IMG/VR virus record: IMGVR_UViG_3300045921_000730
Coordinates: 180,294-244,293 of that record
DNA: 64,000 nt
Reading direction: 5' to 3' (one strand)
Shown here piece after piece: positions 9,971 through 54,765 of this stretch (positions within the stretch are counted from its first letter, which is position 1; each line of letters starts with the position of its first letter). Under the pieces are notes generated by a model. The model saw nothing but the letters and a program-made list of their open reading frames with translations, ran no database searches and was not told the origin of the DNA. A program made the translations under genes and the position numbers.

Positions 9971-12900
9971 ATGAGACGACGTTTATTAAGTAGTCAACAA
10001 ACAGCTCCAGCACAACAACCTAATATTTTGTATACATGGGGTGGAAATAACAATGGTCAACTAGGTGATGGAACAACTGTGAGCAAATCAACACCACAAC
10101 AAATCGGGACCGAAAGTTGGAATATTGTTTCTGGTGGATCCAGTCATACATTAGCTATTCGTAATGACGGAAAATTATTTACGTGGGGTAGCAATACAGA
10201 AGGACAACTTGGTATACAATTTTTATATGCAAACGGAAGCAATTTTGGTTTGATTGGTTCAGGCATTGAAGAATTAGAAAACGTAAAAACATGGAATACA
10301 ATTTCTTCTTCATGTGAGGGTCTAACCATGGCTGGAATAGACAATGCCGGTCGCTTGTTTGTATGGGGAAGAAACAATTGGGGACAATTTGGTCAAGGGA
10401 ATCTAGAAACAGATTCAATTGGTGCCGAATGTGTGCTGCTTCCTGTAAACAATCAGTCGTGGATATCTATATCAGCCAATCGAGTACTCACTGGAACATC
10501 AACACGTCGTTTCTTTGCAGCCATTCGTAACGACGGAAGTTTGTTTGTTTGGGGTGCAAACAACCAAGGACAACTTGGCCTCGGAGACACATTAGATAGA
10601 TCTCTTCCGACCCAAGTCGGTACATCAAGTTGGACCATGGTGTCTTGTGGAAGTGAACATACTTGCGCTATTCGTAGTGACGGTGCATTGTTTGCATGGG
10701 GCTTCAATAATGCAGGTCAACTCGGTGACGGAACAACTACAAACAGATCATCGCCGGTTCAAATTGGAACATCAAGCTGGACTATGGTGTCATGCGGAGG
10801 CGCAGATGGTTTTACACATGCTATCACAAACGATGGTCGATTGTTTGCGTGGGGCGTCGGGTTGTTTGGAGTGCTTGGTGATAATACAATAAATAACAAA
10901 TCTTCACCCGTTCAGATCGGTACATCAAGCTGGACTATGGTATCTTGTGGTGTTTTACATGTAGGAGCAATACGTAGCGACGGTCTTCTATTTATGTGGG
11001 GCCAAAACCTCTTCGGTGAAGTTGGTGATGGAGCACTTACTAACAGATCTTCACCTGTTCAAATTGGAACATCAAGCTGGACCGTGGTGTCTTGTGGTGA
11101 AAGAGCTACAGCTGCTATTCGTTCTGACAATAGTTTATTTGCCTGGGGAAGAAATAACAACGGCCAACTCGGTGACGGAACAACCACAAACAGATCGTCG
11201 CCGGTTCAAATTGGAACATCAAGCTGGATAGCAGTATCGTGCGGTTCAAGCTTTGTGGCCGCCATTAGAAGTGATAATAAACTATTTACGTGGGGAAGTA
11301 ATGATGCGGGTCAGCTAGCTGATCCAACAAGCATCAACCGATCGTCTCCTGTTCAAGTTGGAACATCAAACTGGATATCCGTTAGTGCAGGAAACCAAAT
11401 GTTTGGAGCAATTGATACCAATGGTAAATTATTTACTGTTGGAAACAATTCACATTTTAATCTTGGAAGAATAACATACACAAATTCACCAGTTCAAGTT
11501 GGAACTTCGAGCTGGAATGCTGTTTCTGTTGGTGAAAGACACGTTCTCGGACTTAGAAGCAACAACAGTTTATTTGTCTGGGGAGGTAACAATTTTGGTC
11601 AACTTGGTGACACAAGCACACAAACGAGATTTTCGCCCGTTTCCCTGGGCGGAACTTGGTTGTCTATAAGTGCAGGTCAATTACACAGTGCAGCAATTCG
11701 TAATGACAATATTTTATTTACGTGGGGAAATAACTCAGAAGGACAACTTGGTGACGGAACAACCACAAACAAATCGTCGCCAGTTCAAATTGGAACATCA
11801 AGCTGGACAACTGTGAGTGCCGGTAGTTCTCACACAGCTGCCATACGTGTCAATGGTAGTCTATTTACATGGGGAACAGGAACGTTGGGAGTTCTAGGCA
11901 ATAATTCAACAACGCCTCAATCATCTCCAGTCCAAATTGGCTCTTCGAGCTGGACAGCTGTAAGTGCAGGAGCTTTACACACTCTTGCTATTCGTTTGGG
12001 TGGTTCCCTTTTTGCGTGGGGGTTCAATTCTCAGGGAGAACTCGGTGACGGAACACTTGTTAGTAAATCCTCGCCAGTACAGATTGGTTCTTCAAGCTGG
12101 ACAGCTGTAAGTGCAGGACAATCGCATTCGGTTGCTATACGCTCCGACAATCAATTATTCACCTGGGGCCAAGGTTTTGCAGGGCAGCTTGGTACTCCCG
12201 GTAACAGATCTTCACCTGTTCAAATCGGTGCTGTTGCAACGGGAGTATCCGCCGGAAACAGAAATTCAGTATTTTGGAACGCTGCTGGCGGTCACACGAC
12301 AGGAAATGCCTATCCAACTGAAACCGTGACAGCACTTACACCGTTTGTACTAGGAAGAACAATTTATAATTTTGGTCAAAATGTAAGCGTTCCAGTCCAA
12401 ATTGGCTCTTCGAGCTGGATAGCAGTATCAGGGGGAGAACAACATTCAGTAGCTATTCGTGCTGATGGTGCATTGTTTACATGGGGAAACAATGCTTTCG
12501 GACAATTAGGAAACGGCAATGCCACCACCGTTCGCTCACCAATTCAAATTGGAACATCAAGTTGGACCGCAGTAAGCGTTGGCGGTTCACACACTATGGC
12601 TATAAGATCTGATGGATTATTGTTTGCGTGGGGTGCAAACGATTGGGGACAGCTTGGCGACGGAACAACTTCACCCAAATCATCTCCAGTCCAAATTGGT
12701 TCTTCAAGTTGGTTATTTGTTGATGGTGGAAGTAACTTTACACACGCTATTCGGTCGGATAACTTATTGTTCGGCTGGGGCAACAACAATTTTGCTCAAC
12801 TTGGTGATGGAACATTTACTAGTAGAAGCTCACCGGTCCAAATTGGTTCTTCCAGTTGGGTGGCTGTTTCCTCAGGTGCTTCACACGCTGCCGCTATTCG

Positions 12901-13963
12901 CAGTGACGGCGCTTTATTTACGTGGGGAAATAACAGCTCTGGTCAACTCGGCGACAACACAACAGCAACCAGATCATCACCCGTACAAATTGGCTCTCAA
13001 AGTTGGGTGGCTGTTTCAGCCGGCAATGTGTTTACACTTGGCTTACGTTCAAATTATATTCTGTTTGGTTGGGGCAACAACGGTTGGGGACAACTCGGCT
13101 CTGGAACGACATCAAATAGATCCTCGCCAACACAAATTGGAGCAACAAGCTGGCGTCAAATATCAACAGGCGCCACTCACTCAATGGGCATTAGATTAAA
13201 TCGTGTTAATTTGCCTCTTACAATTTCCTCGGACGTTGATAATTATAATCTCTATACGGCTGTTGCTTCTAATCCTCTTTATGCATCAGGATTAACAGAT
13301 GTAACTCTAACTATCAATTCAGGTGTAAACGTTAAAAGTGCAACAACAGGTACAGCATCGCTCCGAATTCCAGCACAATTTAATGCCAATGATACAATTA
13401 CAGTTATCAATAACGGCACAATTATTGGTAGAGGTGGTAACGGAGGCAATGGCGTGGACTCAGGTAATGGTACGCCTGGTAACAATGGTGGTACAGCACT
13501 ATTAGTTTCGAGACCGGTTACATTCACAAACAACGGTACAATTGCCGGCGGAGGAGGAGGCGGTGGTGGCGGAGGTGGTGCCACAAGAACTGGGCCTGGT
13601 GGGAACCCAAAATCGCCGTCGCCTGTAACAACAACTGTTGCTGGTGGCGGTGGCGGAGGCGGTGCTGGGGGTGGTGCCGGAGGATCAACAACATCTCCTG
13701 CCGTCGGAGGCACACCGGGTCCGTTGGCCGCTGGCGGTAGTGGTGGAGCTGGAGGAACAGGCACAAATCCAGCAGGTCCTGTACAAGGTGGTGCTGGCGG
13801 AGCAGGAGGCGGACAAGGAAATACTGGCTCAACGGGCGGCAATTCTGTCTCTAGTGCTGTACCCTACACCGGTGGTACTGGCGGTGCTGCAGGTGCCGCT
13901 GTTTCAGGTAATCCATTAATTACATGGCCAGCCTTTGGTACACGTTTGGGTCCAATAAGCTAA
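9971..13963 (+). CDS. RCC1/BLIP-II repeat protein (about 21 repeats) fused to a gp38-like glycine-rich adhesin domain
   Basis: Repeated LF.WG.N..GQLGDGTTTNRSSPVQIGTSSW units of ~50 aa. The C-terminal ~250 aa are polyglycine-rich and homologous to 19013..19990. Confidence 0.85.
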   Translation: MRRRLLSSQQTAPAQQPNILYTWGGNNNGQLGDGTTVSKSTPQQIGTESWNIVSGGSSHTLAIRNDGKLFTWGSNTEGQLGIQFLYANGSNFGLIGSGIEELENVKTWNTISSSCEGLTMAGIDNAGRLFVWGRNNWGQFGQGNLETDSIGAECVLLPVNNQSWISISANRVLTGTSTRRFFAAIRNDGSLFVWGANNQGQLGLGDTLDRSLPTQVGTSSWTMVSCGSEHTCAIRSDGALFAWGFNNAGQLGDGTTTNRSSPVQIGTSSWTMVSCGGADGFTHAITNDGRLFAWGVGLFGVLGDNTINNKSSPVQIGTSSWTMVSCGVLHVGAIRSDGLLFMWGQNLFGEVGDGALTNRSSPVQIGTSSWTVVSCGERATAAIRSDNSLFAWGRNNNGQLGDGTTTNRSSPVQIGTSSWIAVSCGSSFVAAIRSDNKLFTWGSNDAGQLADPTSINRSSPVQVGTSNWISVSAGNQMFGAIDTNGKLFTVGNNSHFNLGRITYTNSPVQVGTSSWNAVSVGERHVLGLRSNNSLFVWGGNNFGQLGDTSTQTRFSPVSLGGTWLSISAGQLHSAAIRNDNILFTWGNNSEGQLGDGTTTNKSSPVQIGTSSWTTVSAGSSHTAAIRVNGSLFTWGTGTLGVLGNNSTTPQSSPVQIGSSSWTAVSAGALHTLAIRLGGSLFAWGFNSQGELGDGTLVSKSSPVQIGSSSWTAVSAGQSHSVAIRSDNQLFTWGQGFAGQLGTPGNRSSPVQIGAVATGVSAGNRNSVFWNAAGGHTTGNAYPTETVTALTPFVLGRTIYNFGQNVSVPVQIGSSSWIAVSGGEQHSVAIRADGALFTWGNNAFGQLGNGNATTVRSPIQIGTSSWTAVSVGGSHTMAIRSDGLLFAWGANDWGQLGDGTTSPKSSPVQIGSSSWLFVDGGSNFTHAIRSDNLLFGWGNNNFAQLGDGTFTSRSSPVQIGSSSWVAVSSGASHAAAIRSDGALFTWGNNSSGQLGDNTTATRSSPVQIGSQSWVAVSAGNVFTLGLRSNYILFGWGNNGWGQLGSGTTSNRSSPTQIGATSWRQISTGATHSMGIRLNRVNLPLTISSDVDNYNLYTAVASNPLYASGLTDVTLTINSGVNVKSATTGTASLRIPAQFNANDTITVINNGTIIGRGGNGGNGVDSGNGTPGNNGGTALLVSRPVTFTNNGTIAGGGGGGGGGGGATRTGPGGNPKSPSPVTTTVAGGGGGGGAGGGAGGSTTSPAVGGTPGPLAAGGSGGAGGTGTNPAGPVQGGAGGAGGGQGNTGSTGGNSVSSAVPYTGGTGGAAGAAVSGNPLITWPAFGTRLGPIS

Positions 13964-15002: not shown

Positions 15003-15052
15003 CGAAAATTAGTTGAGAAAACCGCGAAGTATTTAGCTTTGTGGTAGTTCAT
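15003..15052 (+). mobile_element. Short single-hairpin IS200/IS605 derivative (PATE-like), copy E
   Basis: TTAT | CGAAAATTAGTTGAGAAAA-CCGCGAAG-TATTTAG-CTTTGTGG-TAGTTCAT. Confidence 0.7.
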
Positions 15053-15080
15053 ATAAAAAATTCCCCCCCCCCAATGTTAT

Positions 15081-15284
15081 AAATCGAGCTGAGAAAACCA
15101 CATGATTTTTAGTCGCGTGGATGAATCAGCACATTGGTATCTGGTTGGTTTGTCACCATAAATAGTAACGTCTGGTTGTGGGACGCAATCGGACATTAAA
15201 CAAAAACCGAAGGAGGCGTCGATGCTGTTAGGTCAAGTCGATGAATTCGGAAACCATGAAGTTTTTAGCTTCGTGGTAGTTCAT
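15081..15284 (+). mobile_element. Non-autonomous IS605 element carrying an orphan TnpB omegaRNA, copy A
   Basis: Starts after TTAT. Left-end hairpin, then ATAAATA (15158-15164), then from 15170 a scaffold homologous to the 3' end of tnpB 51512..52732; ends GGTAGTTCAT. Confidence 0.85.
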
Positions 15285-15340
15285 TCAAACAATAAAACGA
15301 ATTGAATAAGTATTCAAAGATAAATAAATAAATTGATTAT

Positions 15341-15390
15341 CGAAAATTAATTGAGAAAACCACGAAGTCTTTAGCTTCGTGGTAGTTCAT
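15341..15390 (+). mobile_element. Short single-hairpin IS200/IS605 derivative, copy F
   Basis: TTAT | CGAAAATTAATTGAGAAAA-CCACGAAG-TCTTTAG-CTTCGTGG-TAGTTCAT. Confidence 0.75.
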
Positions 15391-20384: not shown

Positions 20385-20990
20385 ATGACTATTAGCACTG
20401 ATCTTCTAAACACATACGGGGCTGTACATCTTACTAAACTAGTACCAATTGAATTTTGTTATTTTCTCACTCATATATTAATGAGAGAAAATGCTATAAA
20501 TGGCCAAGTTGGAGATCCACAAGTACCTAATTCGTTGGTGTCAGTTCATGGTAATATTGCATTTGATACGCTTCAAGAGCGGTTGTGGCCAACCATTGAG
20601 AAATGTACTGGGAAAGAATTGATACCTACGTATTCATATGCACGGTTATATAGTAATGGTGATATCTTAGAAAAGCATGCCGATCGTCCATCGTGCGAAT
20701 ACAGTGTAACAATCCAACTTGGAAGATCACATCACTATGCGTGGCCAATTTATATGGGTGATATTCGTTTTGATATGGCAGAAGGGGATGCTATAATTTA
20801 CAAAGGTTGTGAAATCGATCATTGGCGCGATAAGTGCGACGGTCCACCGAATTATTATTCGGGCCAAGTATTTTTACATTATGTTGATGCTAACGGCCCA
20901 TATACAGAATGGGCAGGCGACAAACGGTGGCAAGATCTGAAAAATTTTCCGTATCAAAAACAAAGAACATTAGTAATGGAGGCGAAATGA
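20385..20990 (+). CDS. 2OG-Fe(II) oxygenase
   Basis: YSYARLY..GD.L.KHADRPSCEYSVT...HWR motif. Confidence 0.8.
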   Translation: MTISTDLLNTYGAVHLTKLVPIEFCYFLTHILMRENAINGQVGDPQVPNSLVSVHGNIAFDTLQERLWPTIEKCTGKELIPTYSYARLYSNGDILEKHADRPSCEYSVTIQLGRSHHYAWPIYMGDIRFDMAEGDAIIYKGCEIDHWRDKCDGPPNYYSGQVFLHYVDANGPYTEWAGDKRWQDLKNFPYQKQRTLVMEAK

Positions 20991-21589
20991 TATACCAAGT
21001 TCCTTACAAAAATACATTTGGAAAAGACCAATATGCATATTGGGAAAATTTTCTTACAGACGAAGAAATAAATCAAATATTAGCTTTGCCTCAATGGCAT
21101 CAAATGACTGAAGGTCGTATAGGTGGTGCCTCCGAAGTTAATGATCTTAATAAAGAAGTTCGTAGTTCGTCAATTTCTTGGTTTTTACCTACAGCAGAAA
21201 CAAATCACATATGGAAAAAAATGACAGAAATAATATCGGAAGTAAATAGTCGTTTTTTTCAATTTGAAATCACAGGTTGTTATGAACCTGCGCAGCTTGG
21301 CTTATATAAAGCAGAGAGTGAAGATAAGTATGAATGGCATACAGACGCCATTCCTCAAGACAGAGCAGTGCCAAGAAAACTATCAATGGCATTGATGCTT
21401 TCTGATCCTTCAGAATTTGAAGGCGGAGATTTACAGATTAAAACAAACTCTGATCAAGCAATTACTTTAGAACAAAAACGTGGAAGAGCGTGGTTTTTCC
21501 CTTCGTACACTTTACATCGTGTAACACCTGTAACTAAAGGCGTTAGACGTTCTTTGGTTTTGTGGGTTGGAGGCCCTCAATTTAGATGA
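20987..21589 (+). CDS. 2OG-Fe(II) oxygenase, prolyl-4-hydroxylase-like
   Basis: WHTD...RKLS...FEGG.L...FPSY.LHRVTPVTKG.R.SLV.W. ATG 20987 overlaps the upstream stop (ATGA). Confidence 0.85.
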   Translation: MIYQVPYKNTFGKDQYAYWENFLTDEEINQILALPQWHQMTEGRIGGASEVNDLNKEVRSSSISWFLPTAETNHIWKKMTEIISEVNSRFFQFEITGCYEPAQLGLYKAESEDKYEWHTDAIPQDRAVPRKLSMALMLSDPSEFEGGDLQIKTNSDQAITLEQKRGRAWFFPSYTLHRVTPVTKGVRRSLVLWVGGPQFR

Positions 21590-21603
21590 TTTAACCCAAA
21601 ATC

Positions 21604-21728
21604 TATATAGGCTAAGAGCTGGCTGAATTTACGCCTACGGAGTGGCTGATGTTAATGCCACAACGAAGCAGGAATCAAGGTTGCCGTTGGGTGACTCCAC
21701 TTCTTTTTAAGAACACGTGGTGGTTAAG
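21604..21728 (+). ncRNA. Orphan, partly decayed omegaRNA/right end of the second TnpB family, copy G
   Basis: Gap-free match to 54641..54765 with about 19 mismatches in 125 nt (hand count); right-end hairpin damaged. Confidence 0.75.
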
Positions 21729-21740
21729 ATAATAATTTAT

Positions 21741-21944
21741 AAATCGAGCTGAGAAAATCCCACGATTTTTAGTCACGTGGATGAATCAGCACATTGGTAT
21801 CTGGTTCGTTTGTCACCATAAATAGTAATGTCTGGTTGTGGGACGCAATCGGACGTTAAACAAAAACCGAAGGAGGCGTCGATGCTGTTAGGTCGAGTCG
21901 ATGAGTTCGGAAACCATAAAGTTTTTAGCTTCGTGGTAGTTCAT
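21741..21944 (+). mobile_element. Non-autonomous IS605 element with orphan omegaRNA, copy B
   Basis: Near-identical to copy A; TTAT at 21737-21740, ATAAATA at 21818-21824, ends GGTAGTTCAT. Confidence 0.85.
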
Positions 21945-21982
21945 TTTAAACATAAATAGTATATTATTTTCTGGAAAAAACA

Positions 21983-23899
21983 ATGTCTTTAAACAAACGA
22001 AAAAAACACACACCATTACAACCTGATAGTTTACAAAACGCTTTGTTTAGTTGGGGCGACAATAGCGTCGGTCAGCTAGGTACCAACAATTTAGTTAGTA
22101 CTTCATCGCCCGTAAACGTAAACACAGGTACAAGTTGGCAAACGATTTCTGTCGGTAGCTCTCATGCTGCTGCTATTCGTTCTGACGGTGCATTGTTTAC
22201 ATGGGGGAGAAATAATAACGGACAGCTGGGTCTTGGGGATACAATAGATCGTTCAAACCCGACACAAGTTGGTTCTTCGCTTTGGACAGCAGTATCTGCT
22301 GGTGGTAACCATACTCTTGCTATAAGAATTGATGGTCGTTTGTTTGCGTGGGGTCTTAACACTTCAGGTCAACTCGGTGACGGAACGTTAGTTAGCAAAT
22401 CATCCCCCGTGGGAATAGGAACTTCAAGTTGGGCATTTGTAAGTGCTGGCGAAAATCATTCTTTGGGTGGTAGATGGAGCCCTACCGACACAACAAACAT
22501 TGTTCGTATTGATGCGTGGGGACAAAATAATTTTGGACAGCTTGGTCTTGGTGACACAATAACCAGATCAACTCCCGTAGCTTTTGGTACAACAAACTGG
22601 AAAGAAGTTGTAGCAGGAGATTTTCATTCTGTGGGCATACGTACAGATATGACACTATCTGTGTGGGGAAGAAATGATCAGGGCCAACTTGGGTTAAATG
22701 ATACAATTAATAGATCTGCTCCAACAACACTAGGGACAAAGGAATGGTTAAATGTTAGTGCTGGCGTTTCTCGCACCACAGCTATCGATACTGAAAGAAG
22801 ATTATTCGCCTGGGGGACCAATACAGGCGACGGAACAACAATAAACAGATCATCTCCAGTCCAAATTGGTACATCGAGTTGGACGGTAACTAACACTGGA
22901 AATGTTACTCTAGCAATAGATATCAACAACAAATTATTTTCATGGGGAGAAAATTCTTCAGGACAGGGCGGCGACAATACGACAGTAAACAAATCTTCTC
23001 CAGTACAAGTTGGAACATATAATTGGAAATCAATATCAGCAGCAAGAAACAATTTTAGTTTAGGAATACGTGGCGACACAGATCCTGAATATCCATTGAA
23101 AGCAGAATTTGAAGAAGGTGATTCAGCAGTTATTCCTACTGCTCAAGCGTTCAATACGGCACTAAGATTTTTAACAATTTACAATCCATCAAAAACAAAA
23201 ACAATACAGTTGGGTGCCACCGGTGGGGCTCAAGCTTTCAACAGAGGACAAGCGGGTACGTTGTATGGCATGCCGATACGTCCACCAGGATTTACACCAA
23301 CAAACCCAACATTACTTTCAGTTCCGGCTGTAGGATGGAGAACGTTCCCTTCACAAGAACCTGTATTATTAGCTCCTCAAGAAACAAAAAAAGTAATGAT
23401 TGGCTTTAACGGAGGAAATACTGTAACCACCGGGGAAGACTATTTTGCTGTTGCATCAAGAGTCATCGGTTCAAATATATTTCGAATAACAAGAATTCGT
23501 GTTACTGCATCAAGCGTTCAAGGAATTGGATTCAATAATAACGAATACCCAATAGCCGGACAAGCAACGATAAACAATTTCAACAATTTGACTTTGTCTT
23601 CTTTGCCATCAGGAGCTTCTATTATAACACCACTTCCAAATTCTCAAGGATTAATTTTTGCGTGTACACGATTAGAAGGCGAGGGATTTCAAATACGGCC
23701 CGGTCCATGTAGCGAGGCTACATATGATTGGAGTTCAGGTGGTTTTTATGATGTGTTCAATGAAAATATAGTCACAAGTATTTGTTCTACTATACAAGTT
23801 CGTGTGGTCTCAAGTAGTCCAGGTATAAAAGTTGGCATTCTTCGATTGGGATGTAGTGATCCGTATTTTTATATTCAATTTACAGCAAACATTAGTTAA
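21983..23899 (+). CDS. RCC1-repeat protein (about 7 repeats) with an unrecognised C-terminal domain
   Basis: LF.WG.N..GQLG repeats in the first ~365 aa. Confidence 0.8.
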   Translation: MSLNKRKKHTPLQPDSLQNALFSWGDNSVGQLGTNNLVSTSSPVNVNTGTSWQTISVGSSHAAAIRSDGALFTWGRNNNGQLGLGDTIDRSNPTQVGSSLWTAVSAGGNHTLAIRIDGRLFAWGLNTSGQLGDGTLVSKSSPVGIGTSSWAFVSAGENHSLGGRWSPTDTTNIVRIDAWGQNNFGQLGLGDTITRSTPVAFGTTNWKEVVAGDFHSVGIRTDMTLSVWGRNDQGQLGLNDTINRSAPTTLGTKEWLNVSAGVSRTTAIDTERRLFAWGTNTGDGTTINRSSPVQIGTSSWTVTNTGNVTLAIDINNKLFSWGENSSGQGGDNTTVNKSSPVQVGTYNWKSISAARNNFSLGIRGDTDPEYPLKAEFEEGDSAVIPTAQAFNTALRFLTIYNPSKTKTIQLGATGGAQAFNRGQAGTLYGMPIRPPGFTPTNPTLLSVPAVGWRTFPSQEPVLLAPQETKKVMIGFNGGNTVTTGEDYFAVASRVIGSNIFRITRIRVTASSVQGIGFNNNEYPIAGQATINNFNNLTLSSLPSGASIITPLPNSQGLIFACTRLEGEGFQIRPGPCSEATYDWSSGGFYDVFNENIVTSICSTIQVRVVSSSPGIKVGILRLGCSDPYFYIQFTANIS

Positions 23900-24069: not shown

Positions 24070-25011
24070 ATGAATAAACAAACTTTAGCTGCTCTCCGTT
24101 CTGCTTTTTCAAAAGATTCCGAACAAAAAAACCCCTCATCAAATAATTATTATCCTTTCTGGAATATGAAAGATGGTGAAAAATGTGTAATTCGTTTCTT
24201 GCCAGATAAGAACGATGAAAACCCTTATGGTTTTTTGGTCGAAAAGTCTGTCCACACACTTGAAATCAACGGCGAACAAAAAACTGTCCCGTGTTTAACA
24301 ATGTATGGTGAAGACTGTCCAATCTGCAAACTTTCGCAAAAATATTATAAAGCCAAGGATGAGATTAATGGTAAGAAATATTGGAGAAAGAAGCAGCATA
24401 TAGCTCAAGCACTAATTGTTGAAGATCCACTACCTCCAAACGATGCTGGTGAAACGCACGAAGGTAAAGTTCGCTTCATTACTCTTGGTTTCCAACTCTA
24501 CGAAATCATTCAACACGCTTTCAAATCTGATGATGTTCTTGATTCTATTCCTTATGATTTCGAAGAGGGATATGATTTTATTATTAAAAAGTCAAAGCAA
24601 GGAAACTATTCGACCTATGCTGTTGGTTCAAGGTTTGCACGTAAACAACGCCCTCTAACAGAAGAGCAGCTTGCTGTTGCTGAAGCAGATATGGTTGATC
24701 TTTCTACCCTTCTTCCAAAGAACCCAGGGTTCGAAAAAGTGAATAGCATGCTTGAGGCCTCACTTGTTGGTGCAAATTATTCTGACGACGAAGATGAAGA
24801 AGAGTTCGTTCCAACCAAGCCACAAAGACAAACTTCTAAGCCAACAACAAAAGTTGTAGACAATAAAGATGATGAAGATGATGAAGAATTTCAAACACCA
24901 AAAGTAGTTTCTTCTAAAAAGCCAAAAAACGAAGAACCTGAAGACGAAGAAAGTGATGATATGGATGTAGAACAAATCCTTGAATCGCTTCGTAACAACC
25001 GTCGCAGGTAA
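24070..25011 (+). CDS. Single-stranded DNA-binding protein, T4 gp32-like
   Basis: IRFLP, CL..YGEDCPIC zinc motif, GYDF.IK, acidic C-terminal tail; upstream of uvsX. Confidence 0.85.
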   Translation: MNKQTLAALRSAFSKDSEQKNPSSNNYYPFWNMKDGEKCVIRFLPDKNDENPYGFLVEKSVHTLEINGEQKTVPCLTMYGEDCPICKLSQKYYKAKDEINGKKYWRKKQHIAQALIVEDPLPPNDAGETHEGKVRFITLGFQLYEIIQHAFKSDDVLDSIPYDFEEGYDFIIKKSKQGNYSTYAVGSRFARKQRPLTEEQLAVAEADMVDLSTLLPKNPGFEKVNSMLEASLVGANYSDDEDEEEFVPTKPQRQTSKPTTKVVDNKDDEDDEEFQTPKVVSSKKPKNEEPEDEESDDMDVEQILESLRNNRRR

Positions 25012-25019
25012 TTCAATCT

Positions 25020-25044
25020 AGCGGACGGGGTTAACCCGTCCGCT
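25020..25044 (+). terminator. Strong stem-loop (terminator or processing site)
   Basis: AGCGGACGGG-GTTAA-CCCGTCCGCT; the U tail is weak. Confidence 0.55.
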
Positions 25045-25083
25045 TCTAAAAAATTTAGACAAGTAGTAGTTCAGGAGAACACT

Positions 25084-26181
25084 ATGACAGGAAAATTAAA
25101 TTTTATTGATTCATTTATCAAAGAAGTAAACAAACTAGAAGGAATCGGAACTTCTTCGGCGCCACCTCGTTATTGGTACTCAACAGGTAACTATGTGTTG
25201 AATAAAATTATTTCTGGTTCCTTTTATAAAGGAATCCCTCAAGGAAGAATTACAAACTTTGCTGGTCCATCAGGTGCTGGTAAAAGTTTTTTGACAGCTA
25301 ACATCGTTCGTGAAGCTCAAAAATCGGGCGCAATGATTTTAATTGTTGACACCGAGAACGCTCTTGACGATGAGTTCATGACAAAGATTGGCGTTGATGT
25401 AAATGACAAATCAAAATATTTTTACTTTGGTGTATCTACAATTCAACAAGCTGTCAATGTGATTTCACAATTCCTGAAGGGCTATAAAGAAGAATATAAC
25501 AATGATGTAACTGCTCCGCAAGTTTTGATTGTTCTTGATTCTCTCGATATGATGTTAACGGAAACAGAACTTGAAAACTATGAAAAGGGTATCCAAAAAG
25601 GTGATCAGGGCCAAAAGAACAAACAACTAAAAATGATGCTAAGAACATTTACACAAGACATCAAAACATTAAATGTTGCTATGATCTGCACTTCACAAGT
25701 TTATAGAAACCAAGATATCTTAAACGGCGAAGGAGTATGGATTGTTAGCGATGCTGTAAAGTATTCAGCTTCACAAATTGTTCTTTTGAATAAATTAAAA
25801 CTAAAAGATGGGACAGAAGTAAAAGGTATTCGTATGAAGTGTGAAGGTTATAAAACGCGTTTTACAAAACCTTTTCAGACTGTTGTAATTGAAGTTCCAT
25901 ACGAAACTGGCATGGATCCATATAGTGGCTTAGTTGAAACGGCAATCAATTTAAAAATTGTTGAAAAAGCTGGTTCGCGTTATCGAATCGTTGGTAACGA
26001 CGAAACATGGTACGAACGTGATATCCATAAAGTTGCCGACAAAATTCTCACCGCTGCTGAATCAGCACAAGATGCTTTCCTCGGTATTGAAGAAATTCCT
26101 TCTAACGAAATTGATGTAGAAACTGAATCAAAACAAGAAACTATATCACGTCGCAAAAACAAAAATGTAATTGTTGAATAA
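25084..26181 (+). CDS. uvsX: RecA-like recombinase
   Basis: Walker A GPSGAGKS, VDTENALD, IVLDSL; T4-like context. Confidence 0.9.
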   Translation: MTGKLNFIDSFIKEVNKLEGIGTSSAPPRYWYSTGNYVLNKIISGSFYKGIPQGRITNFAGPSGAGKSFLTANIVREAQKSGAMILIVDTENALDDEFMTKIGVDVNDKSKYFYFGVSTIQQAVNVISQFLKGYKEEYNNDVTAPQVLIVLDSLDMMLTETELENYEKGIQKGDQGQKNKQLKMMLRTFTQDIKTLNVAMICTSQVYRNQDILNGEGVWIVSDAVKYSASQIVLLNKLKLKDGTEVKGIRMKCEGYKTRFTKPFQTVVIEVPYETGMDPYSGLVETAINLKIVEKAGSRYRIVGNDETWYERDIHKVADKILTAAESAQDAFLGIEEIPSNEIDVETESKQETISRRKNKNVIVE

Positions 26182-26193
26182 TCCTTGAACAAC

Positions 26194-26225
26194 GGAGATA
26201 ATATTTTATAATATTATCTCCTTTT
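26194..26225 (+). terminator. Rho-independent terminator
   Basis: GGAGATAATAT ... ATATTATCTCC followed by TTTT. Confidence 0.65.
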
Positions 26226-26241
26226 ACTTTGTGAAAAGTAT

Positions 26242-26871
26242 ATGAAAAAAGAACAACTCGACAAAACAAAATTATTAGTTGAAATGATTCTGTTAAGAGA
26301 CCACGAGTATGATAGACAAACGTCTGTTATAAAACACGTACTACAAGAACATCTCTTTCCGATACTAGCCGAATTCCTTAACACACAATCTGAAAAAACA
26401 GAATGGTATACGGTTGACTTAAGGGAAGGAATTTTATTAATTAGCGCACTGGTAACACACGACGTCGATACCGTTCCAGATTTTCTTCAAGAACTTGCCC
26501 CCATGGAAGATAATGAAGATATAGTAAGTGTGCAACGACTAATTAAAATTGTAATACCAGTAACATTATGCTTTGCACCAAAAGAAATTATTTTTGCTTA
26601 CTTAACAGAAAGACTAAAAAACCAACAAAAGACTCAAACGAGTATACCAACCATATATCTTAAACCGTCTCAAGAAGAAACAACAAACACGGACACAACA
26701 GATAATATAAACAACATCACAACTCAACTTGCCAATTTAATTGAAGAGAAACCATCCGAGACAAATTCAGTAAAAATATTTACACCAACTTTTACGGGAG
26801 AACAACTAACTCCTGAACAACTACGAATGTTAGCATTATTTGAAACAACGCAAACTAAAACTAAACAATAA
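26242..26871 (+). CDS. Hypothetical protein
   Basis: 209-aa ORF; no motif recognised. Confidence 0.6.
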   Translation: MKKEQLDKTKLLVEMILLRDHEYDRQTSVIKHVLQEHLFPILAEFLNTQSEKTEWYTVDLREGILLISALVTHDVDTVPDFLQELAPMEDNEDIVSVQRLIKIVIPVTLCFAPKEIIFAYLTERLKNQQKTQTSIPTIYLKPSQEETTNTDTTDNINNITTQLANLIEEKPSETNSVKIFTPTFTGEQLTPEQLRMLALFETTQTKTKQ

Positions 26872-26878
26872 AAATCTT

Positions 26879-27337
26879 ATGGATTCGCCAGCCATTCTTT
26901 TCAAAAATCCTGAGAAGTTATTATTAACATTGGACGAATATCGTGCTTCAATTAAAGAAGTAGAAGCAATCTTAACATTTCAGGGCAAAACACTTCAACA
27001 AATTGATAGAGAACAAGTTGCTTGGCCTTTCTACTATGAACAAAAAAGAATTGAGCTCGAAACTTTGTTAAAGTTTGCTAAAATGCAAGAAGATAAAATT
27101 CGCAGCACGTTAGCACGAAAATATAAAGAAAACTATAGTTTTGATCTTGGTGATAGATTAAGAGATAGTTATATTGATTCGGAACCTTCATACCTTGCAA
27201 TTCATGAACTCGTAATTGAAATAGAACATGTAGTAAACTTATATAAAAGTGTGTGTGATTGTTTTCAAACAAGAGGATATACATTAAGAAATATGACTGA
27301 ACATTTTGTTAATAACATACAGGATCGAGTAATTTAA
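26879..27337 (+). CDS. UvsY-like recombination mediator
   Basis: Helical protein with ID.EP.Y...and RGY.L.N motifs, between uvsX and uvsW; ATG 26879 is the likelier start. Confidence 0.6.
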   Translation: MDSPAILFKNPEKLLLTLDEYRASIKEVEAILTFQGKTLQQIDREQVAWPFYYEQKRIELETLLKFAKMQEDKIRSTLARKYKENYSFDLGDRLRDSYIDSEPSYLAIHELVIEIEHVVNLYKSVCDCFQTRGYTLRNMTEHFVNNIQDRVI

Positions 27338-27340
27338 AAC

Positions 27341-28867: not shown

Positions 28868-28896
28868 AATAGATTATTATTTAAAATAACTATGAT

Positions 28897-29388
28897 ATGT
28901 TAATTTTTGACGAAAACTCACAACCAATCATAATTGATAGCGTAAATGCTCCAATAGTAACGACCCACATTTGGGTTCTTGATTTTACTATGATGGACTT
29001 TACTTTATCACCTCTTTCAGTGATTGAAGAAACAATATGTCCAGGAATTGAAATAGAAATTCTTGGTTATCGTTTTGTTGTTCCTTCACATTGGAATATT
29101 TTAATTTATGATAAAGAAACATCTCAACTTGATGTTGCTGAAATAAAAGAAATTTTAGGAATGGAATTCACAGCTTTTATATATGGACCAAAAAAAGGTT
29201 CCCATGCCGGAGCACCAATTTCCGTAACAAATTATTTTCCAGAATATAAACACATTTCCCCTTCTTTAAATAAATTTCAAATGTTATGTCATCCAATATC
29301 TAGCGACTCGTGGGTAAACATATCCCCGTCTGATAGTTATAATAAGTATTTAAGAAATATGATTGTTAGTGACATTACAGGAACATAA
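28897..29388 (+). CDS. Hypothetical protein
   Basis: 163-aa ORF in the replication block. Confidence 0.6.
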   Translation: MLIFDENSQPIIIDSVNAPIVTTHIWVLDFTMMDFTLSPLSVIEETICPGIEIEILGYRFVVPSHWNILIYDKETSQLDVAEIKEILGMEFTAFIYGPKKGSHAGAPISVTNYFPEYKHISPSLNKFQMLCHPISSDSWVNISPSDSYNKYLRNMIVSDITGT

Positions 29389-29391
29389 AAA

Positions 29392-29745
29392 ATGGCAAAC
29401 GATAAACAAATAACAATTAAAGATTTCAAGATGTGGTTAGAGGGCGTTGAAGAAATGCAGGATGAAAACTGGACACCTTCCCCTACACAATGGAAACGTA
29501 TTCGTGAAAAAATTGATAGCATAACCGAAACACAGAATACATTACCGCAACAGCCAAGACCAGTACAGAGAAGTATGATGGAACCGAACAATTTCCCTCT
29601 TCCACCATCAAATCTTCCTGTTCCACCACAACCAAGTCCGTCTACTATTAATCCTTTGTTTGGGTCTCCAGATTCAGGAATACCTGCAAAAACACCTGCT
29701 GTGGATACAACAGATGGAAAACCATACAAAAGTTCATTCACTTAA
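29392..29745 (+). CDS. Hypothetical protein with Pro-rich tail
   Basis: 117-aa ORF. Confidence 0.6.
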   Translation: MANDKQITIKDFKMWLEGVEEMQDENWTPSPTQWKRIREKIDSITETQNTLPQQPRPVQRSMMEPNNFPLPPSNLPVPPQPSPSTINPLFGSPDSGIPAKTPAVDTTDGKPYKSSFT

Positions 29746-30265: not shown

Positions 30266-30315
30266 TACAATTGTCGGAAGAAAATCGAATGTTCTTTAGA
30301 CGTCTAGCAGTTGAC
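30266..30315 (+). mobile_element. Degenerate single-hairpin IS605 end remnant, copy I
   Basis: GAAGAAAA...GTTCTTTAGACGTCTAGCAGTTGAC resembles copies E, F and H; flank is TAAT rather than TTAT. Confidence 0.4.
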
Positions 30316-30355
30316 TAAATAATACTCCAACAAAAATGAGTATAGGAGAAAAATA

Positions 30356-30640: not shown

Positions 30641-30641
30641 T

Positions 30642-30947: not shown

Positions 30948-30963
30948 TTTGAAGAGAAAATAA

Positions 30964-32220: not shown

Positions 32221-32221
32221 G

Positions 32222-34912: not shown

Positions 34913-34924
34913 ACTACCACAAAC

Positions 34925-51506: not shown

Positions 51507-52822
51507 ATGAACTACCGCGTAGCTAAAGACAACGCGGTTTCCGAACTCAACGACCCAGCCAACTTCACCGGCGCCTCCTTCGGTTTTTGTTTAGAGTCCG
51601 ACTGCGTTCCACAACCAGACATTAAATTCAAACCTTGACGAAGTGTGTTCTTAGCTGCATTGACATCTCTGTCATGTACTTCACCACAAACAGGGCATGT
51701 CCATTCTCTAATGGAAAGATTCATGTCTTGTATGATGTGGTTGCACGAAGAACAAGTCTTACTAGATGGAAACCATCTATCTATTTGAATTACTTGTCTA
51801 CCATGCCATGCTGCTTTGTACTTCAACATCGAAACTAAACTACCCCAGCTAACATCAGATATTGCTTGTGCTAGTTTGTGATTTTTAATCATGTTCTTAA
51901 CACTAAAGTCTTCCAAACAGATTACTTGGTTATCGTTAATCAATTTGGTCGTTACCTGATGAAGATAGTTGTTTCTTTGATCTACTACTTTTTGGTGTTG
52001 TCTTGCTAGTCTGTACCTAGCTTTTGTTCTTGATTTTGTGTCTTTCTTTTTCTTAGAGAGTTGACGTTGGAGGTACTTGATCTTCTTTAGATGCTTCTTG
52101 AGAAATCGTTCGTTCTTAATCTCTGTTCCATTTGAATCGACAAGAAGAGATTTGATTCCAAGGTCAACGCCGATGATTTCACCTGTGGATTCCTTTTGGT
52201 CGATCTCAAACTCACCCTGAATGGAGGCAAAATACTTACCTGAAGCATTCATTGAAATTGTTACAGAATTCGCTTTCACTAATCGACCAGTGAATTTGCC
52301 TTTGAACTTGAATGGAACTTTGAACTTAGGAATCTTTAGGGTTTTTGCATCCCAGTCAATGACGAAATGTTGAGGTACCTTAAATAATTGTCTGCTATTG
52401 TGTTTAGATTTGAACTTTGGGAATTTGGCAATTTTACGGAAGAAGCGATCATATGCTCCATCTAAATCTTTTAGTGCTGCTTGAATTGTCTGAGAATTGA
52501 TTTCCTTTAACCATTCAAATTCAGGATTTTTCTTCATCTCAGTGACTAGAGCAGAGCAAGCATTGTATCCGATCGACTTTTTGTTTTCTAGGTATTCGTT
52601 CTTACGGATCTCAAGAAACTTGTTGAAGACGAATCGACGAGCGCCAAAATGCTTAGCCAAGAGTTCTTTGTCAGACTCTCTTGGATAAATTTGAACTTTG
52701 ACGGACTTCTGAACTATCACTTGATTTAGCATCCTAGATTGTGTTATACTATTATTTATACACAAAATCTCCAAAATATAAGAAATTTTACAAAAAATTT
52801 TTCTATTGAAATGGAATTGGCT
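51507..52822 (-). mobile_element. IS200/IS605-family tnpB-only element 1
   Basis: Right end ...CGCGG-TAGTTCAT at 51507. The left end is placed after the minus-strand TTAT at 52823-52826 (inferred; its hairpin is not recognisable). Confidence 0.7.
51512..52732 (-). CDS. tnpB: RNA-guided endonuclease TnpB, family 1 (406 aa from ATG 52732)
   Basis: HTH start; RuvC GVDLG / LED / HDRDVNAA all intact; CSSC...CPVC zinc finger; omegaRNA overlaps the 3' end. Confidence 0.95.
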   Translation of the reverse strand: MLNQVIVQKSVKVQIYPRESDKELLAKHFGARRFVFNKFLEIRKNEYLENKKSIGYNACSALVTEMKKNPEFEWLKEINSQTIQAALKDLDGAYDRFFRKIAKFPKFKSKHNSRQLFKVPQHFVIDWDAKTLKIPKFKVPFKFKGKFTGRLVKANSVTISMNASGKYFASIQGEFEIDQKESTGEIIGVDLGIKSLLVDSNGTEIKNERFLKKHLKKIKYLQRQLSKKKKDTKSRTKARYRLARQHQKVVDQRNNYLHQVTTKLINDNQVICLEDFSVKNMIKNHKLAQAISDVSWGSLVSMLKYKAAWHGRQVIQIDRWFPSSKTCSSCNHIIQDMNLSIREWTCPVCGEVHDRDVNAAKNTLRQGLNLMSGCGTQSDSKQKPKEAPVKLAGSLSSETALSLATR

Positions 52823-53450: not shown

Positions 53451-54765
53451 CATTGCACGCTCAAAAACCCACTTGTTGTTAGACAAGTAAATGAAAAAGT
53501 GCTAGAATTACTAGCATTTTCACTCGAATAAATAAAATAATTAACTAATAAACGCAAATACCTTTATGATTAAAACGTTTGAGGTTCAATTATTACCAAC
53601 AGAAGACCAGCTGGTGCAATTAAAGCAGCACGCAGGTGCTGTTCGTTGGCTATGGAATCAAATGTTAGAAGCAAATATTCAGAAATATGAGCAAGAGAAA
53701 AAATTCATATTTCGCTTTGAAATGCAAAGGTTATTGCCTGAACTAAGGAAGCAGCATCTGTGGTTAACCGAAATAAACAGCCAATCTCTACACGAACAAT
53801 GCATTAATTTAAACAATGCACTGGTGCGAATATTTAAGAACAAGGCCGGATTTCCGCGTTTTAAGAGCAAACATGATGCTGCCGATTCATTCGCTGTGCC
53901 ACAATTTTTCAATATCTGTAATAGAAGCATTAAGTTACCTAAAATTGGCCGATTGAAATATGCAAAACAGAGATGTTTTGAAGGAAAAGCAAAGAGAATC
54001 GTTGTTAAACAAAGAGACGATAAGTGGTTTGCCCTGATTTCATGTGAATTACCTGATGTTCCTGTTCGATCCGTTGCTGAATCAGAAGTTGTTGGAATTG
54101 ATGTTGGAATTAAAGACTTTGCAATATTAAGCGATGGCACCAAGATATCTAATCCTAAACACCTTGAAAAGAGTGAAAAACTGTTAAGAACTAGACAGAA
54201 AGCACTCTCCAGAAAGGTTAAAGGATCACAAAACTGCGCAAAAGCTCGTAATTCAGTGGCTAAATTACATAGACATATAACAAATCAAAGAAAAGACTTC
54301 CAATGGAAACTGGTTGCTTCGATAGCCAAGAAATGGCAAGTTGTGGCATTGGAAGACCTGAATATTCAAGGAATGATGAAAAACCGGAGGTTATCAAAAG
54401 CAATTGGCTCAGCTGGATGGAGTTCATTTAAAAACAAACTGAACCATAAACTAGCTGAAAAAGGTGGATATGTGGTTGAAATTGGACGGTTTGCACCTAG
54501 TTCAAAAACATGTTCATCGTGCGGACTCATAAATGACAATCTAACTCTCAATGATAGAGAGTGGGATTGTGAATGTGGAGTGCATCACGATAGAGATGTT
54601 AATGCTGCTGTGAATATCAGGAATATAGGAATAAAAGAAATATATAGGCTGGGAACTGGCCGAATTTACGCCTGTGGAGTGGCTGAAGTAGATGTCACAT
54701 TGAAGCAGGAATCACGGTTGCCGTTGGGTGACCCCACTTGTTCTTAAGAACAAGTGGTAGTTCAG
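53451..54765 (+). mobile_element. IS200/IS605-family tnpB-only element 2
   Basis: Left hairpin ACTTGT/ACAAGT (53471-53488) about 20 nt after TTTAA; matching right hairpin CCACTTGT/ACAAGTGG followed by TAGTTCA(G). Confidence 0.8.
53566..54747 (+). CDS. tnpB: RNA-guided endonuclease TnpB, family 2
   Basis: GIDVG / LEDL / HDRDVNAA intact; CSSC...CEC zinc finger. Confidence 0.95.
   Translation: MIKTFEVQLLPTEDQLVQLKQHAGAVRWLWNQMLEANIQKYEQEKKFIFRFEMQRLLPELRKQHLWLTEINSQSLHEQCINLNNALVRIFKNKAGFPRFKSKHDAADSFAVPQFFNICNRSIKLPKIGRLKYAKQRCFEGKAKRIVVKQRDDKWFALISCELPDVPVRSVAESEVVGIDVGIKDFAILSDGTKISNPKHLEKSEKLLRTRQKALSRKVKGSQNCAKARNSVAKLHRHITNQRKDFQWKLVASIAKKWQVVALEDLNIQGMMKNRRLSKAIGSAGWSSFKNKLNHKLAEKGGYVVEIGRFAPSSKTCSSCGLINDNLTLNDREWDCECGVHHDRDVNAAVNIRNIGIKEIYRLGTGRIYACGVAEVDVTLKQESRLPLGDPTCS

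What the first reader, a model, noticed from the sequence alone, without database searches (positions are those of the whole stretch)
15158..15284. Orphan omegaRNAs are each fronted by a phage late-promoter motif
All four family-1 orphans have CATAAATA 4-7 nt upstream of the scaffold start GTCTGGTTG (15158, 21818, 52886 and minus-strand 62945). The tnpB-embedded copy has TTTGAATTTAAT at the equivalent position. The sequences upstream of the motif differ between A/B, C and D, which suggests more than one deletion event ending with the same placement. tnpB1 (TATAAATA, minus 52760-52753) and tnpB2 (AATAAATA near 53526) have the motif too. This points to guides and nucleases co-expressed late in infection by a gp55-type sigma factor, that is, domestication rather than decay.
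Basis: partly seen in the sequence, partly recalled or inferred. Interest (0 to 1): 0.8.

Follow-up and report, generated by a model that had tools for sequence, protein, structure and literature searches.

The report
Guide-only transposons carrying phage late promoters
A giant T4-related phage from hot-spring mats carries about a dozen roughly 200-base, gene-less copies of an IS200/IS605 transposon, each holding a TnpB guide-RNA scaffold preceded by what looks like the phage's own late promoter, so the guides are probably made late in infection alongside the phage's two TnpB nucleases, although no RNA data exist to prove it.

Summary
The motif is real. CATAAATA lies 4-7 nt before GTCTGGTTG in all four orphan copies (15157, 21817, 52885, minus 62946). 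A covariance model finds exactly five full scaffolds in the window.

The sequences upstream of the motif are homologous in all four copies: a TTAT/TTTAT border, then a left-end hairpin that resembles the right-end hairpin. The orphans are therefore copies of one non-autonomous, PATE-like IS200/IS605 element. The source contig holds 12 orphans plus the tnpB1 copy.

A near-identical phage carries one more copy at a site that is empty in this phage. The element is or recently was mobile, not domesticated.

The promoter reading is indirectly supported:
- ATAAATA occurs 21 times in intergenic DNA against 4.6 expected.
- It sits 20-31 nt before structural genes and both tnpB genes, and before none of 16 replication genes.
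- The same contig encodes a gp55-like late sigma factor.
- In other phage contigs at least three independent orphan lineages have a perfect NATAAATA at the same spacing. Only 1 of 26 tnpB-embedded copies does.
- A sister lineage has a sigma-70 extended -10 at that position instead.

No RNA run was listed, so transcription is untested.

The parts
15081..15284 (+). Orphan A, a complete non-autonomous element of 204 nt. TTAT border at 15077-15080, left-end hairpin 15098-15120, CATAAATA 15157-15164, scaffold 15170-15284, presumed guide 15285-15304.
   Evidence: (112.5 bits)
21741..21944 (+). Orphan B, 94% identical to A over 220 nt. TTAT 21737-21740, left-end hairpin 21758-21780, CATAAATA 21817-21824, scaffold 21830-21944, guide 21945-21964. 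The guide overlaps the late-promoter motif of the RCC1-repeat gene at 21951.
   Evidence: D16; 113.4 bits
52838..53013 (+). Orphan C. TTAT 52834-52837, truncated left end, CATAAATA 52885-52892 directly after GATGAATCAGC, 7-nt spacer, scaffold 52900-53013, guide 53014-53033. It lies head to head with tnpB1.
   Evidence: I1, I11; 108.8 bits
62821..63025 (-). Orphan D. TTTAT 63030-63026, left-end hairpin 63005-62983, CATAAATA 62946-62939, scaffold 62934-62821, guide 62820-62801. It is inserted 6 nt downstream of a gene-type TATAAATA (63039-63032) and 20-25 nt upstream of the next minus-strand ORF.
   Evidence: (119.6 bits)
51507..51620 (-). Scaffold E, inside and just past the 3' end of tnpB1. 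TTTGAATTTAAT stands where the orphans have the promoter motif. The right end is at 51507, where contigs of the other copies diverge.
   Evidence: loose ends at 51506/7; about 10-fold depth; 116 bits
51512..52732 (-). tnpB1, 406 aa from the ATG at 52732. The RuvC D-E-D residues are present. TATAAATA at 52760-52753 lies 20 nt before the ATG.
53467..54765 (+). tnpB2 element. Its own left-end hairpin is at about 53467-53500, AATAAATA at 53527-53534, CDS at 53566-54747 (D-E-D present), and the family-2 scaffold ends near 54765.
15003..15052 (+). Hairpin-only mini element of 50 nt. It has a TTAT border, a left-end-type 5' half and a right-end-type 3' half (...GGTAGTTCAT), and no scaffold.
   Evidence: 26.3 bits
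15341..15390 (+). Second hairpin-only mini element of 50 nt, between orphan A and the 1194-aa tail-fibre-like gene.
   Evidence: 30.1 bits

Best explanation
The four 'orphan omegaRNAs' are copies of one non-autonomous IS200/IS605 element, like the PATEs (palindrome-associated transposable elements) of bacteria.

Anatomy of each copy:
- It begins right after TTTAT or TTAT, the presumed transposon-adjacent motif (TAM).
- A left-end hairpin follows.
- Next comes a short spacer holding CATAAATA.
- After 4-7 nt comes a 114-115-nt structured TnpB guide-RNA scaffold. Its last stem-loop is the right-end hairpin.
- The element ends in ...GGTAGTTCAT. The adjoining phage DNA would serve as the guide.

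Shown: the anatomy, the shared descent of the copies, precise insertion at many sites, covariation in the scaffold, and intact TnpB catalytic residues.

Inferred:
1. CATAAATA is a T4-type late promoter read by host RNA polymerase carrying the phage's gp55-like sigma factor. Transcription would start at or within 2 nt of the first base of the scaffold.
2. These RNAs are loaded in trans by TnpB1, whose own scaffold is 86-95% identical to theirs. TnpB1 is itself behind a late promoter.
3. The complexes cut copies of the phage genome that carry TTTAT plus the flank but lack the element. T4-type recombination (UvsX, UvsY, gp46/47) then copies the element back in. This keeps and spreads the elements in replicating or co-infecting genomes, much as homing endonucleases do.

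An own promoter is needed because an orphan has no tnpB mRNA from which the guide could be cut.
For: Element identity:
- A shared left end, TAM-like border and right end in all 12 orphans of the contig plus one in a relative.
- Left and right hairpins resemble each other.
- No ORF lies inside.
- A filled site in L011 against an empty site in L199 shows a precise 201-nt insertion between about 99.5% identical genomes.
- Contig ends pile up at the right-end border, and depth there is about 10-fold.

RNA:
- 20 of 34 predicted pairs show compensatory changes across 30 scaffolds.
- Stem 1 starts at the G of GTCTGG and contains G-U pairs, so the structure is strand-specific.

Promoter:
- 21 intergenic ATAAATA against 4.6 +/- 2.2 in 500 shuffles.
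- The motif lies 20-31 nt before the starts of genes 5932, 20048, 21983, 35012, 38525 and 40803, a small minus-strand ORF at 50196, tnpB1 and tnpB2. It precedes none of the 16 genes of the replication block at 24070-34912.
- A gp55-like sigma factor lies in the same contig: phrog_234 E 4e-28; 29% identity to T4 gp55, E 5e-11; next to gp47/gp46 homologues.
- Related Rak2-like jumbo phages are reported to have a gp55-like factor and an ATAAATA late motif (PMC5259590, PMC6102473).
- The motif keeps its distance to the scaffold (4-7 nt), while its distance to the left-end hairpin is 0 or 26 nt.
- It is the least variable segment of the element: 0.045 differences per site, against 0.18 in the spacer and 0.10 in the scaffold.

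Comparative:
- A perfect NATAAATA 4-6 nt before GTCTGG occurs in orphans with unrelated upstream DNA: L002, L003, L023, L026, L083/L144/L160 and L117. Only 1 of 26 tnpB-embedded copies has it.
- Well-supported branches of the tree force at least 3 origins.
- L002 and L011 also encode gp55 homologues.
- A sister PATE lineage has TGnTAnAAT plus exactly 6 nt at the same place.

Nuclease: TnpB1 matches ISDra2 TnpB at E 5e-69. Both TnpB proteins keep the D-E-D residues.

Precedent: PATEs that encode omegaRNAs acted on in trans are described for Geobacillus (PMC10055086).
Against: - There is no transcript evidence. No RNA run was listed for this DNA, and no cultured relative matched at the DNA level.
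- Within this genome, conservation of the motif is largely explained by common descent of the copies.
- The tnpB genes of the nearest relatives carry the same motif before their ATG. One full-length element (L078) has CATAAATA just after its left-end hairpin. The motif could therefore be an inherited transposon promoter.
- No TnpA (Y1 transposase) was identified, so what mobilises the elements is unknown.
- The family-2 orphan at 21603-21728 has no such motif.
- Loading in trans by TnpB1 and cutting of empty sites are inference only.
- The one empty site found reads TTCAT, not TTTAT. This fits the model, but it is a single case.
Confidence: 0.6

Rival explanations
1. Passive inheritance. The motif is simply the promoter of the ancestral transposon's left end or tnpB gene, kept by the deletion that made the first orphan and copied with it. 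The orphans are neutral debris, and any RNA they make has no role.
For: All copies in the genome share the junction by descent. tnpB1 and its relatives L014, L041 and L130 have [T/C]ATAAATA before the ATG. L078 has CATAAATA 13 nt after its left-end hairpin. Hairpin-only mini elements show that the family does decay.
Against: The spacing to the scaffold is kept while the distance to the left end varies. The motif is the least variable segment. Several orphan lineages with unrelated upstream DNA have the perfect motif at the same spacing, while embedded copies almost never do. A sister lineage holds a different promoter type at the same spot. Scaffold pairs covary between the A/B and C/D/E types. 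The region upstream of tnpB1 is not homologous to the orphans' left end.
Confidence: 0.2
2. Mobile promoter cassette. The main effect of the element is on the phage gene downstream. The internal late promoter reads through the scaffold, which has no terminator, into the next gene. The copies would then act like the promoter-plus-stem-loop cassettes described in T4-type phages, and the guide-RNA function would be secondary.
For: 11 of 12 copies point the same way as the downstream gene, often 20-90 nt from its start. No terminator-like site follows the right end. D sits between a gene's own TATAAATA and its ribosome-binding site. In the opposite orientation, the left-end hairpin followed by TTTTCTC looks like a terminator, which would select for co-orientation.
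Against: A and B are followed by further gene-proximal motifs, so the downstream genes do not depend on the element's promoter. Strong covariation of the scaffold and the intact ends point to a TnpB/TnpA-related role. This rival is compatible with the best explanation rather than exclusive of it.
Confidence: 0.15
3. Domesticated guide set. The orphans are fixed, immobile phage genes whose guides direct TnpB against host or competitor targets chosen for the phage's benefit.
For: Late-promoter motifs stand on the guides and on both nucleases. In other contigs some orphans lack any left-end hairpin and sit between a terminator and the next gene (L003, L023).
Against: In this phage the ends and TAM borders are intact. 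One site is polymorphic between near-identical genomes. The 20-nt guides match only their own flanks in all sequence held. TnpB1 and TnpB2 are ordinary nuclease-competent transposon proteins.
Confidence: 0.05

Closest known systems
PATE-like, protein-less IS200/IS605 elements that encode omegaRNAs (Geobacillus stearothermophilus; Meers et al. 2023, PMC10055086)
   Same: Left and right ends with hairpins, no gene, an omegaRNA scaffold that must be used in trans by a TnpB encoded elsewhere, and many copies per genome.
   Different: Here the host genome is a lytic-type jumbo phage. The element carries a phage late-promoter motif abutting the scaffold. No TnpA is known for it.
tnpB-only IS200/IS605 elements with TnpB-omegaRNA (ISDra2 TnpB, PDB 8H1J/8EXA)
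   Same: tnpB1 and tnpB2 have the HTH, OrfB and zinc-ribbon domains with an intact RuvC triad. The scaffold overlaps the 3' end of the gene and ends at the right end, and the guide is the flank.
   Different: The inferred TAM is TTTAT/TTAT rather than TTGAT. The genes sit behind T4-type late-promoter motifs. The embedded scaffold has no promoter motif of its own.
T4 late promoters (TATAAATA, gp55/gp33/clamp) and late-expressed homing-endonuclease genes of T-even phages
   Same: An 8-bp -10-type element without a -35 element, placed before structural genes. A gp55 homologue and a clamp loader are encoded. Selfish nucleases would be expressed when genomes replicate and recombine. The comparison with T4 rests on general knowledge and on PMC2988022 and PMC5259590.
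   Different: The first base is free (N-ATAAATA) and is C in the orphans. The product would be a guide RNA rather than a protein. Nothing has been mapped experimentally.
Promoter-plus-stem-loop cassettes (PeSL) of T4-type phages (from memory, not checked here)
   Same: Short repeated intergenic modules that combine a hairpin and a promoter, co-oriented with genes.
   Different: Those cassettes carry early promoters and spread by recombination. These elements are transposon derivatives with TAM-defined borders and a guide-RNA scaffold.
TldR, phage-encoded nuclease-dead TnpB relatives with fixed guides (PMC10705468)
   Same: TnpB-family proteins and guide RNAs encoded by phages.
   Different: TldR proteins have lost catalysis and mobility, and they repress host genes. 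Here the triad and the transposon ends are intact.

Membership tests
Non-autonomous IS200/IS605 element (PATE-like) | Subterminal hairpins at both ends that resemble each other | tested here: met
   The left end reads AAACC-stem-TT(C/T)AG-stem-GATGAATCA. The right end reads AAACC-stem-TTTAG-stem-GGTAGTTCAT.
Non-autonomous IS200/IS605 element (PATE-like) | Insertion 3' of a short conserved motif, with sharp borders and no target duplication | tested here: met
   TTTAT (9 copies) or TTAT (3 copies) precedes every copy, and flanks diverge exactly after ...TTCAT. The filled/empty pair differs by 201 nt with no duplication. However, the empty allele reads TTCAT.
Non-autonomous IS200/IS605 element (PATE-like) | No protein-coding gene inside | tested here: met
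   The elements are 176-205 nt long, and only spurious short ORFs overlap them.
Non-autonomous IS200/IS605 element (PATE-like) | Mobilised by a Y1 (HUH) TnpA transposase | not tested
   No tnpA was seen next to any family member. The rest of the 244-288 kb genome and the host were not scanned.
TnpB omegaRNA | Overlaps the 3' end of tnpB and ends at the transposon right end | tested here: met
   Copy E lies at 51620-51507. The tnpB1 stop codon at 51512 falls inside the terminal hairpin.
TnpB omegaRNA | Conserved secondary structure supported by covariation | tested here: met
   20 of 34 pairs show compensatory changes in 30 sequences.
TnpB omegaRNA | Match to a curated RNA family | tested here: not met
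   Family 1 has no Rfam match, even at E up to 10. Family 2 gives a sub-threshold RAGATH-18 match (31.1 bits against a gathering score of 44.9).
TnpB omegaRNA | Bound by TnpB and guides DNA cleavage next to a TAM | not testable with these tools
   This needs biochemistry or an interference assay.
T4-type late promoter (gp55-dependent) | TATAAATA-like element without a -35 element | tested here: met
   N-ATAAATA is present. The scan calls no sigma-70-type site in front of the orphans.
T4-type late promoter (gp55-dependent) | Found before late (structural) genes and not before early or replication genes | tested here: met
   21 intergenic motifs against 4.6 expected. The motif lies at -20 to -31 before nine genes, and before none of the 16 genes at 24070-34912.
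T4-type late promoter (gp55-dependent) | gp55 homologue in the same genome | tested here: met
   L196 lies in IMGVR_UViG_3300045921_000730 and scores phrog_234 E 4e-28.
T4-type late promoter (gp55-dependent) | gp33 co-activator and sliding clamp | tested here: inconclusive
   Clamp-loader homologues lie at 32280 and 33537. The clamp candidate at 34199 matches only a family of unknown function. gp33 was not searched for.
T4-type late promoter (gp55-dependent) | Late transcripts starting about 6 nt after the motif | not testable with these tools
   No RNA run was listed.
Active TnpB nuclease | RuvC D-E-D catalytic residues and a zinc ribbon | tested here: met
   TnpB1: GVDLG, LED, HDRD. TnpB2: GIDVG, LED, HDRD. 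Pfam domains are complete.

The most novel reading that the evidence does not exclude
The phage carries a multi-locus RNA-guided drive. TnpB1, together with about a dozen late-expressed guide-only elements, would cut every co-infecting relative that has TTTAT plus the flank but lacks the insertion. T4-type recombination would then convert those genomes, excluding markers at many loci at once. Empty alleles whose TAM reads TTCAT, like the one found in this phage, would be resistance alleles. Promoter swapping between lineages (T4-late against extended -10) would show that guide-only elements adapt their expression to each resident genome.
Probability: 0.3. Interest if true: 0.8.

Novelty: new variant of a known kind. 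Interest (0 to 1): 0.6.

Why it matters
Guide-only derivatives of IS200/IS605 elements are known in bacteria. How their RNAs are made, and whether they work in trans, is largely unexplored.

This window offers a natural case with a clear, testable design: a minimal single-element promoter set directly against the scaffold, in a genome that also supplies the matching sigma factor and two intact nucleases. The promoter type differs between lineages (T4-late here, extended -10 in a sister lineage) while its position stays the same. That argues that expression of stand-alone guides is selected.

If TnpB and these guides act on co-infecting genomes, this would be an RNA-guided counterpart of the protein homing endonucleases of T-even phages. 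It would also be a step on the road from transposon guides to arrays of independently expressed guides.

Tried and rejected
- The 8-mer alone is not enriched in the whole window, so chance had to be judged from its context instead.
- One of six exact GTCTGGTTG matches (3969, minus strand) is a chance hit inside a coding region.
- The region upstream of tnpB1 was aligned to the orphans' left end. The similarity was no better than for shuffled sequence, so the orphans are not simple deletions of the tnpB1 locus as it stands.
- Rfam gave no family for the scaffold.
- Megablast and blastn against GenBank phages found nothing.
- My first collection scan used a mis-registered pattern and returned nothing. 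It was corrected.
- RNA runs: none was listed. DNA contigs laid on 50401-56400 gave copy number, element borders and a tnpB2 deletion variant, but no orphan polymorphism.
- gp55 was sought in the window and in six other loci of the contig without success. It was then found through a relative's contig.
- Guides were searched in all held DNA with up to 2 mismatches in 16 nt. They matched only their own flanks.
- Predicted empty sites of orphan D and of the L012 copy were not found in viral contigs.
- An exact-protein look-up of the ORF at 20909-21589 failed, probably because its start was called differently. The look-up of the RCC1 gene found only the same strain.
- A sigma-70 promoter as the explanation was rejected. 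The scan calls none in front of the orphans, and the best hand-made fit lacks the key -10 bases.

Full report
**Source.** The window is part of IMGVR_UViG_3300045921_000730 (244,293 bp). A 288-kb assembly of the same phage also exists. The samples are hot-spring microbial mats.

The phage has a T4-type replication and recombination module:
- gp32-like at 24070
- UvsX at 25084
- UvsY-like at 26840
- gp41-type helicase at 27341
- clamp-loader subunits at 32280 and 33537

Its nearest UvsX relatives, at about 45% identity, are jumbo phages of Stenotrophomonas, Xanthomonas, Ralstonia and Agrobacterium. Most of the rest of the window encodes very large structural proteins.

**The observation.**
- CATAAATA lies at 15157, 21817, 52885 and 62946(-), and GTCTGGTTG follows after 5, 5, 7 and 4 nt.
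- The copy inside tnpB1 has TTTGAATTTAAT in that place.
- tnpB1 (406 aa from the ATG at 52732) and tnpB2 (393 aa) are complete TnpB genes. Both keep the RuvC D-E-D residues. Each has N-ATAAATA 20 or 31 nt before its ATG.
- A covariance model built from 30 scaffolds finds exactly five full copies in the window.
- The scaffold is a real structured RNA. 20 of 34 predicted pairs show compensatory changes. The first helix starts at the G of GTCTGG and contains G-U pairs, which fixes the strand.

**What the orphans are.** It is not. All four copies share the same left-end module:
1. The element begins just after TTAT or TTTAT.
2. Next comes GCTGAGAAAACC, a hairpin, and GATGAATCAGC.
3. A 26-nt spacer follows, which is deleted in C.
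4. The motif comes last.

The left hairpin resembles the terminal hairpin of the scaffold, and each copy ends sharply at ...GGTAGTTCAT. These are the two ends of an IS200/IS605 element with everything between the left-end region and the guide-RNA scaffold removed. Such elements are called PATE-like in Geobacillus, where their omegaRNAs are thought to be used in trans (PMC10055086).

The source contig holds 12 such orphans and one tnpB1-embedded copy. Contig depth over the scaffold is about ten-fold, and contigs break at the right-end border.

The elements have moved. A phage about 99.5% identical in the flanks (L011) has a 201-nt copy between two baseplate-region genes, and this phage (L199) has none at that site. 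The filled allele reads ...AAATTTAT|element|CTGCGCC..., and the empty allele reads ...AAATTCATCTGCGCC.... The empty site therefore equals the expected joint except for one base in the TTTAT motif. That base is one of only six differences in about 1,400 nt of flank.

There are two possible readings. Either insertion needed the TTTAT allele, or the empty allele has escaped cutting. This is a single case, and I treat it as a lead.

The family also decays. Two 50-nt hairpin-only remnants flank orphan A. A run from the same mats holds a variant in which tnpB2 is deleted between its two hairpins.

**Is the motif a promoter?** There is no direct evidence, because no RNA run was listed. The indirect evidence is good:
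- ATAAATA occurs 21 times in the 4,974 nt of intergenic DNA, against 4.6 +/- 2.2 in dinucleotide-preserving shuffles (maximum 12 in 500).
- It is nearly always co-oriented with the next gene.
- It lies 20-31 nt before the start codons of six structural genes, a small minus-strand ORF and both tnpB genes. It precedes none of the 16 genes of the replication block.
- The same contig encodes a gp55-like late sigma factor next to gp47 and gp46 homologues, as in T4 and Atu_ph07.
- Related Rak2-like phages are reported to have a gp55-like factor and an ATAAATA motif before structural genes (PMC5259590, PMC6102473).
- The scan calls no sigma-70-type promoter in front of the orphans.

From general knowledge, a T4 late start lies about six bases after the motif. 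The predicted starts then fall at the first scaffold base in A and B, two bases before it in C, and at the second base in D.

**Is the placement selected or merely inherited?** Within this genome the junction is shared by descent, so the four copies are not independent evidence. Three observations go beyond descent.
1. The motif keeps its distance to the scaffold while its distance to the left-end hairpin is 0 or 26 nt. It is also the least variable segment of the element.
2. In 188 loci fetched from viral and metagenome contigs, orphans with unrelated upstream DNA carry a perfect N-ATAAATA 4-6 nt before GTCTGG: L002, L003, L023, L026, L083/L144/L160 and L117. Only 1 of 26 tnpB-embedded copies does. 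There the position encodes a conserved Q-G-L-N/K-I stretch, which gives near-misses such as TTTAAATA. On a scaffold tree, well-supported branches force at least three origins. All promoter-bearing orphans fall in the major clade that contains tnpB1. Two of these contigs also encode gp55 homologues.
3. A sister lineage of PATE-like elements with the same left end has, at the same place, TGnTAnAAT followed by exactly six bases and then the G of the scaffold. This is a textbook extended -10 promoter.

The position is therefore constant and the promoter type varies with the lineage, which is what selection for stand-alone expression predicts.

Against this, the closest tnpB genes carry the same motif before their ATG. 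One full-length element has CATAAATA just after its left hairpin. Simple inheritance of a transposon promoter therefore remains a live rival.

**What it is not.** It is not a domesticated guide set:
- The ends are intact.
- One site is polymorphic between near-identical phages.
- The 20-nt guides match only their own flanks.

The family-2 orphan at 21603-21728 has no such motif and follows a gene directly.

**Side effects on the phage.** 11 of 12 copies point the same way as the gene downstream, and no terminator follows the right end. In the opposite orientation, the left hairpin followed by TTTTCTC would look like a terminator. The elements may therefore also feed late transcription into neighbouring genes, and inverted insertions may be selected against.

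**Verdict.** The 'late promoter' idea is well supported but unproven. The 'several deletions' idea is wrong within the window but right across phages. 'Domestication' should be replaced by 'active, guide-only selfish elements adapted to the phage's late transcription'.

Noticed in passing
L011:11357-11558 (-) versus L199:4020-4040: A family-1 orphan of 201 nt is present in a roughly 99.5% identical phage and absent here. The empty site reads TTCAT where the filled allele has TTTAT before the element.
   Followed up: yes
window 15003-15052, 15341-15390; also 34918-34963 (-): Hairpin-only mini elements of about 50 nt, with a left-end-type 5' half and a right-end-type 3' half. They look like the end point of decay by recombination between the two hairpins.
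   Followed up: partly
window 21603-21728: A family-2 (tnpB2-type) orphan scaffold lies directly after the stop codon of the 2OG-Fe(II) oxygenase gene and has no late-promoter motif. Orphan B is inserted 12 nt downstream of it.
   Followed up: partly
window 53483-54764: In run X5 a contig joins 53482 to 54765, so tnpB2 is deleted between its left and right hairpins. Depth over 54601-54800 suggests about three family-2 scaffolds in the genome.
   Followed up: partly
L004:278-407 (-): This copy ends in GGTAGTTTAT, so its right end equals the TAM. That might expose its own flank to cutting.
   Followed up: no
window 63039-63026 (-): Orphan D is inserted at CTTTAT, 6 nt after a gene-type TATAAATA. 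It separates that promoter from the ribosome-binding site of the next ORF by about 205 nt.
   Followed up: partly
window 62983-63005 (+), 51567-51584 (+), 62881-62898 (+): On the strand opposite to the element, the left-end hairpin and one scaffold helix are each followed by a T-run and score as terminator-like.
   Followed up: no
window 53176-53248: A tRNA-Ala (TGC) gene lies between orphan C/tnpB1 and tnpB2, preceded by TATAAATT.
   Followed up: no
window 63619-63978: A run of at least 13 tandem 20-nt repeats lies at the end of the window. The purpose is unknown and it could be an iteron-like region.
   Followed up: no
window 15066-15075: A run of ten C sits between the first mini element and orphan A.
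   Followed up: no
window 9971-13963, 21983-23899, 45913-47169: Three genes are built of 147-150-nt RCC1-type repeats, which dominate the repeat content of the window.
   Followed up: no
window 56458-58089: A 543-aa ORF matches phage HNH/homing-endonuclease families (phrog_3339, E 5e-124). This is a second kind of selfish nuclease, close to the tnpB cluster.
   Followed up: no
L008:162-270, L012:4165-4248, L013:2663-2758: Weak covariance-model matches of 24-32 bits elsewhere in the same phage contig. They are probably further degenerate copies or hairpin remnants.
   Followed up: no
window 51512-51620 (-): The tnpB1 reading frame runs through the whole guide-RNA scaffold and stops 5 nt before the right end, so about 36 C-terminal residues are encoded by the scaffold itself.
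   Followed up: no
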